From: Salpingoeca rosetta
Lineage: Eukaryota; Protista; Choanoflagellata
Assembly (NCBI GenBank): GCA_033442325.1
Contig: JAWQFM010000012.1
Coordinates: 1,473,793 to 1,537,792, forward strand
Reading direction: 5' to 3'
DNA length: 64,000 nucleotides
Below, in pieces: positions 3,625-61,141 of this stretch. Position numbers and translations under genes: made by a program. Each line of letters opens with the position of its first letter. Position 1 is the stretch's first letter. The notes beneath the pieces are model-generated. The model was not told where the DNA came from. It did not search any database and saw only the letters and a list, made by a program, of their open reading frames with translations.

Positions 3625-3815
3625 ATGACAAGCAGAGGAACAGCGCAACCACCGTTACAACGCGTGGGTGATCGTGGCGGTGGTGATGACAGTGGTGGTG
3701 GTGGTGATGGCACCAAGAGCCGTGTGCGCGGCAACCACGACAGGGATGCCGACACCACGCAACACACGGATGCTTTGAACGGCATGACGGATGAGAACGA
3801 CTACACGGGGTATTC

Positions 3816-3881
<66 letters not shown>

Positions 3882-6338
3882 CTTTGAGGAGGGGAGTCAT
3901 GAAGACGACGTGAATGAAGACGATGGCGATGACGATGGCAGTGACAACAGCGACCGCGACAGCCGACACGACAGTGGCAGTGACGACGACAATTACAGTG
4001 ATCACGACAGTGACAACAGCGGCCGCGACAGCCAAAACGACAGCGACAATGGTGACGACGACAATCACGACAACCACAACGACCGCAACAGCGAGAAAGG
4101 CGATGCTGTCGAAGAGGGCGCTCAGCAACGATCCATGCAAGGACACAATGACAGCAGCACCGCTGGTGCAGAGGCTGGGTCCAGTCGCAAAGGAACAACA
4201 GACAAAAAGGAAACACAAGGAGTCGCCTCCTCCTCCTCCTCCGCTGCCGCCGCCTCATCGTCCCTGGCAAAGGCTGCGCGTGAGGTCTTGCTGCAGAACC
4301 CGGCCGATGCAGAAGGCTATCGGCGGCCGCAGTCTTTTGCGCAGTTTGTCAAGCAGCTGCGCCGACTCAGAGAGCAAGAGCGAAGTGCGCAGCATCCACT
4401 GGACGTGTTCCTGCAACGGCCACCGGTGCAGGGCCCAGACGAGGTGCAGCTGCATCAGCACGTCCTGCGGCTTTCCGCAACGCACGTGCGCGCGCAGGAT
4501 GAGCGCACCAGGGAGCACCAGCAGCTCGTAGCCCGCATTGACCGCCTCCGCGCGTCCGTGCATGAGTTTGTGGGCCTCACCAACAACCTCGTCCAGCACC
4601 AGCACCAGCACCAGCTGCTGCAGGAAGGGGACGCCACAACAGAGCCGTACGGCACCAGCCGCTCCCAGCACATGCTGGCCAAGGTGCAGGAGACGATGGA
4701 GAATGTGGAGAGCAACATCGACGCGTTCAAGCAGCGGCAGATGACGCAGTACGATGCGCTGCTGCGAGACGAGGCGGCGCTGGCGCGCGAGCTGGTGCTG
4801 TCTGGGGACCGGTTTGGCCAGTGGCAGGAGGAGGACAGGCGGCGGGCAGAGGAGCGGCGGAGGCGGCAGCAGCAGCGGCGCACTAGTCTCAGTGATCAAG
4901 TCTGCGCGATTACTTCCTGCAGTTCTTGTTATATCCCGTCCGCGCCTTACAAATTCGGTGCACGTGTCATGCCATTCGGCTGCTCAATTACAAGGTAGAA
5001 CTCGTACAGTCGCGCGGGGCGTGGGACGGGTTCAGACTATTCCATTTCCCTTACCGCGCAAATCACCCCCCAGGACCTTGAGCCTGTACAACAATCCAGG
5101 GTGAGTGTGCGTTTAGGTGTATAATTCAAATGTCGCAACTCTGAGGGACCTCAAGTTTTTTGCTAAAAACTGACGTTCTCGTGGTACGAAGTTTGTTTTA
5201 ATGCAAAACTCTGTCCAGAATGTGCGCCCACCTTGATGACGCAAAGGAAGATAACCGGGTTTAGGTGGCGTTTTAACGAGACCACTCTCAGATGTGCCAT
5301 ATGTGGTAAAGACTAGGGCAGTACCTTTCTGCGAACTACTATACGATCGACATCGACCTGCCTTGTACTCATAAATCTATTCAGGGTTTGCAAAAGAATT
5401 GTTGATCCTCAGGACCGAAGGGGGGGAGTTGCTCTTACATGAGCCTGTTGCCAAATGACCATGTAGGCTGACGGGTCATATAGTAGGTGAAGTTCACTCA
5501 CCCAGACCACAACGTGTTCCTTCGCCTGCGCAAGCAGCACAAGGGAGACAAGGCGGGGCTGGCTGGGGCGGTGGCGGAGGCGCTCGTGGGCAAGTCGCAG
5601 GCAGACGCAGAGGAGCACGAGCAGTGGTACGCGACGCTGGTTGAGCTGCGGCGCAAGTACAAGGCAGCGATTGCGGCGTGGCGGCGGGAGCAGGAGGAGG
5701 AGAGGGCGCGCATGGCCAAGGCGATGCAGGCCAAGGGCCGGGACGACGACCAGAGCGGAGAGGCTCGGCAGCGCAGGCAGGAGGAGGCGAGGCGGCAGCG
5801 GCAGCGAGAGAAGGCGCGGGAGGTGGCGGCGTGGCGCAGGCGGCAGGCCGAGGAGCGGCGCAAGGCAGAGCAGGAGCAGGCCAGGCGGGAGCGGGAGAAG
5901 GAGGAGCAAGCGCGGCAGGAGGAAGAGCAGCGGCAGCGCGCGCTGAAGAAGCAGGTGTCCGCATACCGGCGGGTGCGAGAGGCGGAGCAGCGGGCGCGGG
6001 AGGAGGCCGAGGCGCAGAGGAGAAAGGTGGAGGCTGCGGCGGCAAAGCCGTCCAATCACGACCTGCAGCGGCTGCGGCGGCGAGATGAGGAGCGCATGCG
6101 GGCACGGCTGGAGAAGCAGCGTAAGGCCGAGGAGGAGGCGCAGGCGCGCGCCCAGCGGCTGGACGCCCTGCGCAGCAAGGTGGCGTCGACGGTGAAGGTG
6201 AAGCGCGATCCTGGCCGCCTTCTGCGACTCAACGAAGCAGCGAAGAACAGGAAGAAGGACACCACCAAGCAAGGCGGCCAGGTCATCTCCCGCGCCCCAC
6301 CAAAGCTCAAGGTGCCCACATGGCGTAAAGGCATGTGA
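3625..6338 (+). CDS. CCDC112: CCDC112-like coiled-coil protein with an acidic N-terminal extension, interrupted at 4885-5498
   Basis: The 5' ORF has IDAFKQRQMTQYDALLRDEAALAREL..W. The 3' ORF has DHNVFLRLRKQHKG..GKSQADAEEHEQWY..KAAIAAWRRE and ends DPGRLLRL..VPTWRKGM*. Both match the CCDC112 pattern as recalled. The halves are in different frames and separated by foreign sequence. Confidence 0.75.
3818..3882 (+). repeat. (GAT)n coding trinucleotide repeat (poly-Asp)
   Basis: Run of about 21 GAT codons visible in the ORF. Confidence 0.95.
4885..5498. other. Compositionally foreign ~614-bp block inside the CCDC112-like CDS (unclassified insertion or replacement)
   Basis: About 48% GC by hand count over 4891-5490, against GC-rich flanking exons. 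No CA/TG microsatellite and no internal ORF >=60 aa. Flanked by CACT at 4881-4884 and 5495-5498. Confidence 0.75.
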
Positions 6339-6388
6339 GCGTGTGTGGGGGGAGTGCACCTGTTTGTCTGGTGGTCTGTGTGTGTGTG

Positions 6389-20401: not shown

Positions 20402-22224
20402 CGGAAGACCGAGCACGTGCTGTTGGACGGATGCAACACGATGTCTTTGAACTGATGCGCATGCTGATGATAATCCTGCACCAGTACGTGAAGAAGGGGG
20501 GATACATGATCATTCATGCGCGCGCTGAGCTCACGGGGATGGTGGTCACACACACACTTTCACGGACACCTGCTCTACTGCCTCATGTGATTACCGCACC
20601 TGCTGTAACTGATATGTAGCTCGGGTGCTCCTGACGCTGCGTGGGGNNNNNNNNNNNNNNNNNNNNNNNNNNNNNNNNNNNNNNNNNNNNNNNNNNNNNN
20701 NNNNNNNNNNNNNNNNNNNNNNNNNNNNNNNNNNNNNNNNNNNNNNNNNNNNNNNNNNNNNNNNNNNNNNNNNNNNNNNNNNNNNNNNNNNNNNNNNNNN
20801 NNNNNNNNNNNNNNNNNNNNNNNNNNNNNNNNNNNNNNNNNNNNNNNNNNNNNNNNNNNNNNNNNNNNNNNNNNNNNNNNNNNNNNNNNNNNNNNNNNNN
20901 NNNNNNNNNNNNNNNNNNNNNNNNNNNNNNNNNNNNNNNNNNNNNNNNNNNNNNNNNNNNNNNNNNNNNNNNNNNNNNNNNNNNNNNNNNNNNNNNNNNN
21001 NNNNNNNNNNNNNNNNNNNNNNNNNNNNNNNNNNNNNNNNNNNNNNNNNNNNNNNNNNNNNNNNNNNNNNNNNNNNNNNNNNNNNNNNNNNNNNNNNNNN
21101 NNNNNNNNNNNNNNNNNNNNNNNNNNNNNNNNNNNNNNNNNNNNNNNNNNNNNNNNNNNNNNNNNNNNNNNNNNNNNNNNNNNNNNNNNNNNNNNNNNNN
21201 NNNNNNNNNNNNNNNNNNNNNNNNNNNNNNNNNNNNNNNNNNNNNNNNNNNNNNNNNNNNNNNNNNNNNNNNNNNNNNNNNNNNNNNNNNNNNNNNNNNN
21301 NNNNNNNNNNNNNNNNNNNNNNNNNNNNNNNNNNNNNNNNNNNNNNNNNNNNNNNNNNNNNNNNNNNNNNNNNNNNNNNNNNNNNNNNNNNNNNNNCACA
21401 CACACACGACACACACACACACACAAGAGAGAGAGAGAGACAACCCCCGCAAGCGCAAACACATGCTCACACGTCCACACACACACACGTCCAAACACAC
21501 ACACACACACACACACACTGACCAGGCACGCCGTAGCTCCACGCGAGCGTTGCGATGCGCACGTGGTCTGTGATCGCAAAGGCGTCGCTGGTCGAGCCAT
21601 CCTCAGCATTGTCAGCAGCATTGCTGTCATGGATGCCAGCGCCGCTGCCGTTGTCGTCGTCAAGACAGACACACGGCTGGGAGCCCGGCGCCACCTGCAG
21701 CGTTTTCGTTGGGCCATTCCGCTCCGCCACCGTGAGCACGCCACTGCTGCAGTCGAGGACAAACATAAACGACCGCGGTGTGCGCTCTGTCGGCGGCCAC
21801 GGCATGAGCGTGGCCTTGCCGTACTGCAGCACATCTGCCTTGCAGTCGATAAACACGCCAAGCGGCTTTTTCAGGGCGGCTTGCGTCGGCGTCTGCACAC
21901 CGAGCGCACACACACGATGCGACAGCACTTGCAGCTCCCACGTCAGCTGCCAACACACCGTGACAAATGGGCCAGAGCAGGCGAGGGTGAGGATGAGCGC
22001 TGTTGCGGTGCACCTGGTGTCAGTCAGAGCACACGCACAAACGAATACACGACAACCACAACAAACCACGCCACAAGAATGCCACACACCACACCAGCAC
22101 ACAGAGCATCACAGCACAACGCCCCGCACCAGGCCGCGATCAAATGTGGTGTCAAGGGCAAACACGCCCGGACGAAGCTTGGTGAAGGCCATGTTGGCAA
22201 TGGGAACAAGCTCTGAAGGGCCAT

Positions 22225-45724: not shown

Positions 45725-46077
45725 NNNNNNNNNNNNNNNNNNNNNNNNNNNNNNNNNNNNNNNNNNNNNNNNNNNNNNNNNNNNNNNNNNNNNNNNNNNN
45801 NNNNNNNNNNNNNNNNNNNNNNNNNNNNNNNNNNNNNNNNNNNNNNNNNNNNNNNNNNNNNNNNNNNNNNNNNNNNNNNNNNNNNNNNNNNNNNNNNNNN
45901 NNNNNNNNNNNNNNNNNNNNNNNNNNNNNNNNNNNNNNNNNNNNNNNNNNNNNNNNNNNNNNNNNNNNNNNNNNNNNNNNNNNNNNNNNNNNNNNNNNNN
46001 NNNNNNNNNNNNNNNNNNNNNNNNNNNNNNNNNNNNNNNNNNNNNNNNNNNNNNNNNNNNNNNNNNNNNNNNNNNNN
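45725..46077. other. Assembly gap
   Basis: Run of N. Confidence 1.
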
Positions 46078-48908: not shown

Positions 48909-49348
48909 NNNNNNNNNNNNNNNNNNNNNNNNNNNNNNNNNNNNNNNNNNNNNNNNNNNNNNNNNNNNNNNNNNNNNNNNNNNNNNNNNNNNNNNNNNNN
49001 NNNNNNNNNNNNNNNNNNNNNNNNNNNNNNNNNNNNNNNNNNNNNNNNNNNNNNNNNNNNNNNNNNNNNNNNNNNNNNNNNNNNNNNNNNNNNNNNNNNN
49101 NNNNNNNNNNNNNNNNNNNNNNNNNNNNNNNNNNNNNNNNNNNNNNNNNNNNNNNNNNNNNNNNNNNNNNNNNNNNNNNNNNNNNNNNNNNNNNNNNNNN
49201 NNNNNNNNNNNNNNNNNNNNNNNNNNNNNNNNNNNNNNNNNNNNNNNNNNNNNNNNNNNNNNNNNNNNNNNNNNNNNNNNNNNNNNNNNNNNNNNNNNNN
49301 NNNNNNNNNNNNNNNNNNNNNNNNNNNNNNNNNNNNNNNNNNNNNNNN
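48909..49348. other. Assembly gap
   Basis: Run of N. Confidence 1.
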
Positions 49349-52293: not shown

Positions 52294-52393
52294 NNNNNNN
52301 NNNNNNNNNNNNNNNNNNNNNNNNNNNNNNNNNNNNNNNNNNNNNNNNNNNNNNNNNNNNNNNNNNNNNNNNNNNNNNNNNNNNNNNNNNNNN

Positions 52394-60228: not shown

Positions 60229-61141
60229 CTGGGCCCTTGGTTCAGTGGCCGAGTGGGCCAGTTAGGAAGAGGCCAGGTACAAAGCTGTCGCGCACGCTCT
60301 CGGGCAACGAACGATGCCAAAACGCAGCGCTGCTGTGAAGTTGGTGGAGGGTATCACTCCCCCGAGTGGCTTGATGATGGAGCAAGTTTGCCAAAACGGA
60401 AGGGACGCGCAGCCGTGACCCACCGACTGCAGAGAGGGCGGGAGAGTGGGGGCACTGATAGATAGATACGCCTAACTGGCTGGCAGAAGTGTCAAGTGTA
60501 ACGACGTCTCCAAGGCCAGTCAGCAACCAGTCAGGGATCAGGTCAGCAGCAACGCAGCAAAGGTACGGCAGGGGGAGGGGGTGGGGTCAGCCGCTGTTGC
60601 TTTGCTTTGCTTTGCTGTGCTTGCTTGGCAGTTTTGTTTGGGTGGCGAGGAAAACGGACGGCGGCTCTGAAATTCGCGGCAGAGTATACGACTAGTTGAT
60701 TTTAGCGGCTAGTGCGCATTGGTGGATAGCGCCCAAGGCAACCGATGCAGGCCCCGCAACGAGCAAGCAAACAACAAGCAAACAACAACAACAACAACAA
60801 CACAACCAACAAACAAGCAACAAGAGTGCCAAGACGTGTTTGCCTGATCGGACTCAGGGTGCACTCTCTCTCGTCGGAAGGTTGATAAGCCAGCCAGCCA
60901 ACCAGCCAGCAAGCCAACGAGCCAGCCAGCAAGCCAGCCAGCCAGCCAGCCAGCCAACGAGCTCACACGTTTGCTGCTGCGAATTGAAGCAACAGCCCAG
61001 CGGAAGATTACAAAGCCTCTCCAACACACACATACACACATACACACACGTGGCTGCTGTTGCCAAGCAAGCAAGCAAGTGAGACAGCGCGCACAGGCAC
61101 GGCAACCAACCAGCATTCAACAAACAACAACACAGAGGGGT

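What the first reader, a model, noticed from the sequence alone, without database searches (positions are those of the whole stretch)
4885..5498. Foreign ~614-bp block splits a CCDC112-like gene; CACT direct repeats at the borders and frame restored on removal
Seen: the GC-rich coding sequence switches abruptly to ~48% GC high-complexity sequence with frequent TA dinucleotides and none of the CA/TG tracts typical of introns here. The upstream frame stops at 4998 and the downstream ORF is in another frame. CACT occurs at both junctions (4881-4884, 5495-5498), and deleting 4885-5498 gives an in-frame join RRT|HPDHNVF. There is no convincing donor site and no TIR or internal ORF. Knowledge: CCDC112 homologs have an 'LPxEV..FE.FL..GG..GxW' segment before DH.F, which is absent here, so native sequence may have been replaced rather than just interrupted. 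Inference: a novel non-autonomous element or non-canonical intron/ncRNA cassette, a foreign DNA patch at a repaired break, or an assembly chimera.
Basis: partly seen in the sequence, partly recalled or inferred. Interest (0 to 1): 0.82.

Follow-up and report, generated by a model that had tools for sequence, protein, structure and literature searches.

The report
Random-letter assembly filler splitting CCDC112
The 'foreign' 621-base block is not part of the choanoflagellate's genome: it is random-looking filler in the public reference assembly, standing where 148 real coding bases of an intact, expressed CCDC112 gene belong.

Summary
Window 4884-5504 (621 nt) splits a true CCDC112 orthologue.

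- **Reads:** depth over the block is zero in two RNA-seq runs and in two contig sets. Those contigs join 4883 to 5505 through 148 other letters, which keeps the frame (50 codons).
- **Composition:** the block fits uniform random letters (k=1-4 chi-square p 0.5-0.8; stops at 3/64 in all six frames). None of 2229 natural windows of this genome, and none of 988 E. coli windows, is that uniform.
- **Other tests:** it is single-copy, has no ORF, no inverted repeats and no Rfam match, folds no better than shuffles, and matches nothing searched.
- **Origin:** the same letters stand in the public Salpingoeca rosetta record (GCA_000188695.1, GL832959.1:98815-99435), so the scan did not add them.
- **Not unique:** I found three more uniform-random blocks (484, 375 and 159 nt), in microsatellites or at a truncated exon. 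Over 100 first-reader notes on this genome describe similar blocks on other DNA.

Most likely these are sequence gaps filled with pseudo-random letters during the 454/Sanger hybrid assembly. Verdict: not a real feature.

The parts
3625..4883 (+). 5' part of the CCDC112 orthologue (ATG at 3625), read-supported up to 4883
   Evidence: The public gene call spans window 3625-6338. DNA contigs match 3900-4883 with no differences, and RNA depth is 1-16 with the strand bias of a + strand transcript. It aligns to the homologue P0001 at E=1e-35.
4884..5504 (.). 621-nt filler of random-like letters; not present in any read set laid; stands in place of 148 nt of native coding sequence
   Evidence: Depth is zero in 4 runs, and contigs carry 148 other letters between 4883 and 5505. 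Composition is uniform for k=1-4 and the six-frame stop fraction is 0.0468. It is single-copy, has no Rfam match, folds at z=+0.27, and has no DNA match in the plasmid, E. coli, GTDB or JGI collections. The identical letters are in GCA_000188695.1.
5505..6338 (+). 3' part of the CCDC112 orthologue (DHNVFLR... to the stop at 6336-6338)
   Evidence: DNA contigs match 5505-6340 with no differences and it is expressed. It is 55% identical to P0001 residues 294-570, E=1e-71.
   Evidence: Simulation: 53% of random blocks give such a repeat.
5495..5498 (.). right CACT; lies inside the random filler

Best explanation
The block is an artefact of the public Salpingoeca rosetta reference assembly, not DNA of the organism. 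SHOWN: in the DNA and RNA reads laid, the CCDC112 gene is one uninterrupted reading frame. In it, 148 GC-rich bases (50 codons, carrying the family's conserved ...GG..GGW.EY motif) lie between window 4883 and 5505. The assembly has 621 letters there instead, and they are statistically indistinguishable from uniform random sequence. The same letters are in GenBank assembly GCA_000188695.1. At least three other blocks of the same kind sit in microsatellites or at a truncated exon. INFERRED (about 50-60% within the artefact reading): these are places that could not be sequenced. In the intermediate 454 Newbler scaffolds they were N gaps of estimated size. They were turned into pseudo-random A/C/G/T when that assembly was loaded into ARACHNE's 2-bit base format for HybridAssemble, so they came out as 'sequence' inside contigs. 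The estimated gap (621) simply differs from the true one (148). One consequence is that the public gene model (717 aa) has to skip the filler as intron sequence, so it lacks the conserved segment. Reads imply 746 aa.
For:: depth is zero over 4884-5504 in RNA runs X21 and X22 and in contig sets X19 and X1. Contigs of 2074 and 2060 nt match 3900-4883 and 5505-6340 perfectly, with 148 other letters between. 6 (X22) and 6+4 (X21, X22) RNA reads run from the flanks into that other sequence; those letters read ...T RRRAQARRA... and ...GGQRGGWTEY|DHNVFLR in frame; 20 holders from 9 studies reach at most 0.76 of the sampled words, about what remains once the block (0.21 of the stretch) is left out; chi-square p is 0.64, 0.83, 0.53 and 0.51 for k=1-4, and the stop fraction is 0.0468 against 3/64. 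None of 2229 natural 621-nt windows of this genome falls below 110.6, whereas the block scores 61.6; none of 988 E. coli K-12 windows reaches it (minimum 67.2); single copy, no Rfam match, no DNA match, no ORF, no inverted repeats, fold z=+0.27; identical 621 letters in GL832959.1; further uniform blocks at G000:C1:2134258-2134741 (inside (CA)n, by PISD), C5:2349921-2350295 (abutting a GH20 exon) and C1:130102-130260 (inside (TG)n); these blocks are unrelated to one another. (PMC4054682): 454 fragment and 3-kb jumping libraries were assembled with Newbler, merged with Sanger data by ARACHNE HybridAssemble, and then edited by hand; more than 100 unverified first-reader notes describe 'foreign/random-looking' 210-680-bp blocks where exons are missing or inside microsatellites.
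Against: The original 454 and Sanger reads and the assembly's AGP and quality files could not be examined. It is therefore not shown that no original read carries the block, nor that a Newbler gap lay here. That ARACHNE's import randomises N is my recollection of the fastb format, not a tested fact, and I found no paper that reports it. Ordinary N gaps coexist in the same scaffolds, so two kinds of gap have to be assumed. One other block is even more uniform than independent random letters should be (k3 chi-square 29-31 for 63 degrees of freedom), which is unexplained. Only 4 of the 24 listed runs were laid.
Confidence: 0.9

Rival explanations
1. Another kind of assembly artefact: unclipped low-quality Sanger or 454 read tails, or a hand-made gap closure, bridged two contig ends across a GC-rich hard stop.
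For: The missing native 148 nt are very GC-rich (the loose ends are about 75% GC), which is a typical sequencing stop. The paper says gaps were closed by hand with ARACHNE tools.
Against: Base-caller noise is normally biased in composition and rich in runs. This block and three others fit uniform letters for k=1-4, and one is over-uniform, which points to a number generator.
Confidence: 0.06
2. Real DNA of another organism (prey bacterium, cloning host, vector or carrier) brought in by a chimeric clone.
For: The culture was grown with Algoriphagus, and plasmid and fosmid libraries were used.
Against: No match in 72,556 plasmids or 5,426 E. coli genomes. A 30-mer is absent from 185,579 species genomes and from JGI metagenomes. 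There is no ORF in any frame, although bacterial DNA is mostly coding. No natural window tested is this uniform in composition. The recurrence at microsatellites does not fit chimeric clones.
Confidence: 0.02
3. A genuine insertion-deletion (filler DNA at a repaired break, or a mobile element) present only in the culture that was sequenced for the reference.
For: The block replaces rather than interrupts native sequence, as NHEJ filler can. The reference culture's own original reads were not checked.
Against: All laboratory lines go back to the same isolate (PMC10232365: same strain as the original project). 9 studies from 2013-2026 lack the block. It is single-copy, without inverted repeats or a significant target duplication. 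Its composition is random. The same kind of block recurs at gap-prone sites.
Confidence: 0.015
4. A spliceosomal or non-canonical intron, or an ncRNA cassette, excised from the transcript.
For: A GT at 4886 and an AG at 5504-5505 would keep the frame. The public annotation treats most of the block as intron.
Against: The block is absent from genomic contigs, not only from RNA. No RNA read joins the flanks directly; reads continue into 148 other letters. There is no Rfam match and no folding signal. The conserved CCDC112 segment lies in the 148 nt.
Confidence: 0.005

Closest known systems
Scaffold gap (N run) in a draft assembly
   Same: It stands where sequence could not be obtained (a GC-rich piece here, microsatellites elsewhere). 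Its length (621) is an estimate unrelated to the true length (148). Its size falls in the range of the sized N gaps nearby (234-889). It truncates gene models.
   Different: It is written as A/C/G/T instead of N, so it is invisible to gap-aware tools and gets annotated as intron or exon.
Introner-like or other non-autonomous DNA elements that create introns
   Same: A few hundred bp, non-coding, interrupts an exon, with a short direct repeat at the borders.
   Different: It is single-copy, has no inverted repeats, its repeat is at chance level, it is absent from genomic reads and it is not spliced.
Filler DNA at non-homologous end-joining junctions
   Same: Replacement of native bases by unrelated sequence.
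   Different: Such filler is usually copied from elsewhere in the genome or from an organelle. This block matches nothing and is not in any read set laid.
CCDC112 (coiled-coil domain-containing protein 112), the host gene
   Same: Sequence homology to named CCDC112 of Octopus, Aplysia, Trichoplax and a chytrid, and to choanoflagellate orthologues. It shares LPPEV..F...GG..GGW..YDH..FLR and the C-terminal KVPxWR.
   Different: The S. rosetta protein has a long acidic, low-complexity N-terminal extension. In the reference assembly its conserved core is cut by the filler.

Membership tests
Assembly artefact (filled gap) | Absent from independent DNA reads of the same organism, which carry a different sequence at the site | tested here: met
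   contigs of X1 and X19 have 148 other letters between 4883 and 5505, and depth over the block is zero; no holder exceeds 0.76 of the words.
Assembly artefact (filled gap) | The letters carry no biological signal (composition, coding, structure, homology) | tested here: met
   uniform composition; no ORF; no RNA signal; no match.
Assembly artefact (filled gap) | Recurs at gap-prone sites across the assembly | tested here: met
   three more uniform blocks, two inside CA/TG microsatellites and one abutting a GH20 exon. For these, only composition was tested, not reads.
Assembly artefact (filled gap) | Coincides with a contig or gap boundary of the intermediate (Newbler) assembly; no original read underneath | not testable with these tools
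Spliceosomal intron | Present in genomic DNA and removed from mRNA at defined junctions | tested here: not met
   no genomic support and no exon-exon joint. Reads run on into other letters.
Transposable or introner element | Several copies; terminal repeats; target-site duplication above chance | tested here: not met
   one copy; no terminal inverted repeats; CACT expected by chance in 53%.
Structured non-coding RNA | Rfam match, or folding energy beyond shuffles | tested here: not met
   no match at E<=1; z=+0.27, and 13 of 20 shuffles fold as well.
CCDC112 (host gene) | Significant sequence similarity to named CCDC112 proteins over the conserved C-terminal two thirds | tested here: met
   P0001 is 55% identical to the window's 3' part. 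It hits Octopus CCDC112-like at 5e-36, the Aplysia cluster at 5e-32 and Trichoplax at 2e-26. Atlas scores are 0.96-0.97 to CCDC112/CCDC148 clusters.
CCDC112 (host gene) | Conserved LPPEV..F...GG..GGW..YDH..FLR segment | tested here: inconclusive
   The assembly lacks it. RNA reads supply GGQRGGWTEY before DHNVFLR. The middle 88 of the 148 letters were not shown by the tool, so LPPEV itself was not seen.

The most novel reading that the evidence does not exclude
The block is genuine DNA that existed in the culture sequenced around 2009. That would be a de novo, essentially template-free 621-bp insertion replacing 148 bp of a ciliary gene, one of over a hundred such events. It would imply an unknown process that writes random sequence at microsatellites and GC-rich sites in a choanoflagellate.
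Probability: 0.01. Interest if true: 0.85.

Novelty: not a real feature. Interest (0 to 1): 0.1.

Why it matters
Biologically it does not matter: the CCDC112 gene of S. rosetta is intact and expressed. Practically it is worth knowing. The reference assembly of the main choanoflagellate model seems to contain on the order of a hundred stretches of pseudo-random letters that are not marked as gaps. They truncate or distort gene models: here a 717-aa model against the 746 aa implied by reads, losing the family's conserved core. First-reader notes point to thiolase, PISD, USP32, TMTC, hexosaminidase and others. They also survive re-scaffolding, and they invite false 'novel element', 'lost exon' or 'lineage-specific intron' calls in comparative work and in scans like this one. 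A simple k-mer uniformity test finds them.

Tried and rejected
- **Intron reading.** I looked for in-frame GT-AG pairs by eye and by enumeration. No single GT/GC-AG intron reproduces the public 717-aa product, and 755 two-intron combinations do, so the public model could not be reconstructed. One search made the question moot.
- **N-to-random conversion by the scan's own store.** Rejected: N runs are kept in the window, and the block is also in the separately stored NCBI record.
- **A planted decoy.** Rejected for the same reason.
- **Contaminant or vector.** No hits.
- **A 21-nt match of block 5011-5031 on a foreign contig (tables 5 and 8).** The own-genome search finds only a 2-mismatch hit on C1, so it is chance.
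- **C12:1411793-1412094, next to a 6.3-kb N run.** It looked random-like, but it is not uniform (p=0.002), so it is natural sequence.
- **Word-based protein searches** found only P0001, and Pfam found nothing. The family was settled by the exhaustive search.
I therefore reached further blocks through Pfam searches of genes named in earlier notes. The thiolase and GH43 loci fetched showed none.

Full report
**What is in the sequence.** The window is GC-rich and intron-poor around a + strand ORF that starts at the ATG at 3625. GC is 0.65-0.67 up to about 4900, drops to 0.445-0.46 over 5101-5500, and rises to 0.685-0.75 afterwards. The upstream frame ends at a stop at 4996-4998. The downstream ORF (5487..6338) is in another frame. 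CACT stands at 4881-4884 and 5495-5498, and removing 4885-5498 joins RRT to HPDHNVF in frame.

**What the reads say.** I laid two 2026 RNA-seq runs (raw reads), one contig set guessed to be RNA and one DNA contig set on 3900-6340.
- All four cover both flanks. RNA depth is 1-16, with the strand bias expected for a + strand transcript in a stranded library.
- All four have zero depth over 4884-5504.
- A 2074-nt DNA contig and a 2060-nt contig match 3900-4883 and 5505-6340 without a single difference, and carry 148 other letters between the two parts.
- RNA reads run from 4883 rightwards and into 5505 from the left through those other letters, with no direct flank-to-flank joint.
- With the two bases left over from the codon at 4882-4883, the 148 letters make exactly 50 codons. 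The visible ends translate to T-RRRAQARRA... and ...GGQRGGWTEY, followed by DHNVFLR.
- Across the 20 runs from 9 studies that hold the gene, the share of sampled words never exceeds 0.76. That is about what is left once the block (21% of the stretch searched) is taken out.

**What the host gene is.** Pfam and the word-based protein search left it open, so I used the exhaustive search with the one homologue found, P0001 (570 aa).
- P0001 is 55% identical to the 3' part (E=1e-71) and 35% identical to the 5' part (E=1e-35), and it carries both parts in one chain.
- The search returned 379 representatives. Among them are proteins named CCDC112 in Octopus, Aplysia and Trichoplax (and so named by UniRef for a chytrid), plus choanoflagellate orthologues. 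The Atlas look-up pointed the same way.
- In the alignment, every animal and choanoflagellate orthologue has LPPEV..F...GG..GGW..YDH..FLR across the place where the assembly is cut. The window's 5' piece ends about 30 residues before it, and the 3' piece begins at DHNVFLR.
- The gene is therefore a normal, intact, expressed CCDC112 orthologue of 746 aa by the reads. The conserved core begins inside the 148 nt that the assembly lacks.

**What the block is.** It is single-copy in the 55.4-Mb genome. It has no Rfam match at E<=1, no ORF above 51 aa and no inverted or direct repeat beyond chance. Its folding energy is no better than shuffles (z=+0.27). It has no similarity in the plasmid or E. coli collections, and a 30-mer is absent from the GTDB species genomes and the JGI metagenomes.

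Its composition is the telling feature.
- Base, dinucleotide, trinucleotide and tetranucleotide counts all sit at the expectation for independent uniform letters: chi-square 1.7/3, 9.8/15, 61.6/63 and 253.6/255 (statistic/degrees of freedom).
- Stop codons occupy 0.0468 of the codons in the six frames, against 3/64 = 0.0469.
- Among 2229 natural 621-nt windows of this genome, the lowest trinucleotide chi-square is 110.6 and the median is 437.
- Among 988 windows of E. coli K-12, a genome with balanced composition, the lowest is 67.2.
- A Markov log-odds scan marks 4884-5495 as the only strong random-like segment in the window (77.8 bits).

**Where it comes from.** Looking up a neighbouring window protein returned the public record GCA_000188695.1, scaffold GL832959.1. 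That record holds the identical 621 letters at 98815-99435, with no N. Its scaffold structure differs from the window's genome (2.24 Mb scaffold against the 1.75 Mb piece C12), so the block was inherited from the original assembly and not added by the scan. The public gene call spans window 3625-6338 and gives 717 aa, so it skips 560 nt of the region as intron.

The genome is Salpingoeca rosetta: about 55 Mb, sequenced with 454 fragment and 3-kb jumping libraries plus Sanger plasmids and fosmids. The 454 data were assembled with Newbler, merged with the Sanger data by ARACHNE HybridAssemble and then edited by hand (PMC4054682). It was later re-scaffolded with Hi-C without gap filling (PMC10232365).

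**It is not alone.** First-reader notes on this genome list more than 100 'foreign' or 'random-looking' blocks of 210-680 bp. They sit where conserved exons are missing or inside CA/GT microsatellites, some flanked by perfect direct repeats. These notes are unverified.

Using genes named in those notes, I fetched loci by Pfam search and ran the same detector. Three more blocks turned up:
- a 484-nt uniform block inside a (CA)n tract next to the PISD match (G000:C1:2134258-2134741);
- a 375-nt one abutting a GH20 exon (C5:2349921-2350295);
- a 159-nt one inside a (TG)n-rich tract (C1:130102-130260).

The PISD block is unrelated to ours: longest common substring 10, same-offset identity 0.25. 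In 264 kb sampled without targeting, only the present block was found, which is about the rate the notes imply. True N gaps also occur, at microsatellites, with sizes of 100 and 234-889.

**Most likely mechanism.** That the block is not in the organism and is an assembly product is shown. How it arose is inferred. Places that 454 and Sanger reads could not cross (a piece with about 75% GC here, microsatellites elsewhere) were N gaps of estimated length in the Newbler scaffolds. When that assembly was imported into ARACHNE, whose base store has two bits per base, the N were replaced by pseudo-random bases and ended up inside final contigs. This fits the uniform statistics, the gap-like sizes, the sites, and the mismatch between 621 and the true 148. 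It rests on my memory of that file format, and I found no paper describing it. One block is more uniform than independent letters should be (k3 chi-square 29-31, below the 1st percentile of simulations). That hints at a generator rather than noise but is otherwise unexplained.

**Rivals.**
- Read-tail noise or a manual closure is the next best artefact mechanism.
- Contaminant DNA, a culture-specific insertion, a mobile element, an intron or an RNA gene are each contradicted by several independent tests, as listed under the rival explanations.
- The CACT 'target-site duplication' is expected by chance in about half of random blocks at this site.

**Verdict.** The block is not a biological feature but unmarked filler in the public reference. 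The one useful outcome is a warning about this assembly and a simple way to find the other blocks.

Noticed in passing
L026:1022-1505 (G000:C1:2134258-2134741): A 484-nt block of the same random kind lies inside a (CA)n microsatellite, just upstream of the PISD (PF02666) match. Its trinucleotide chi-square is 29-31 for 63 degrees of freedom, more uniform than 99.9% of simulated random sequences.
   Followed up: partly
L044:1134-1508 (G000:C5:2349921-2350295) and L042:2519-2677 (G000:C1:130102-130260): Two more uniform-random blocks. The 375-nt one abuts a GH20 hexosaminidase exon. The 159-nt one is inside a (TG)n-rich tract. Composition was tested, reads were not.
   Followed up: partly
G000:C12:1380100-1380213 (L012): About 19 units of the telomere-type repeat CCCTAA lie on a 433-nt contig between two 100-N gaps in the middle of a 1.75-Mb piece. 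This could be a misplaced telomeric contig or a scaffold join.
   Followed up: no
window 4593-4615: RNA reads (3 in X21, 8 in X22) show a 'goes back 23 plus one A' joint in the (CACCAG)n / HQ repeat, which would be 24 extra bases. The DNA contig agrees with the assembly there, so these are probably reads of other loci with the same repeat.
   Followed up: no
window 3922: 7 and 3 RNA reads carry 13-16 letters before 3922 that differ from the window, in the acidic GAT/GAC-rich region downstream of the (GAT)n run at 3823-3880. This may be repeat-length error or cross-mapping.
   Followed up: no
window 20647-21396, 45725-46077, 48909-49348, 52294-52393: Ordinary N gaps of 750, 353, 440 and 100 nt. 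All but the left side of the first are flanked by CA/GT microsatellites.
   Followed up: partly
window 60666-60746: An 81-nt stretch with a weak random-like score (18.8 bits). It is too short to judge.
   Followed up: no
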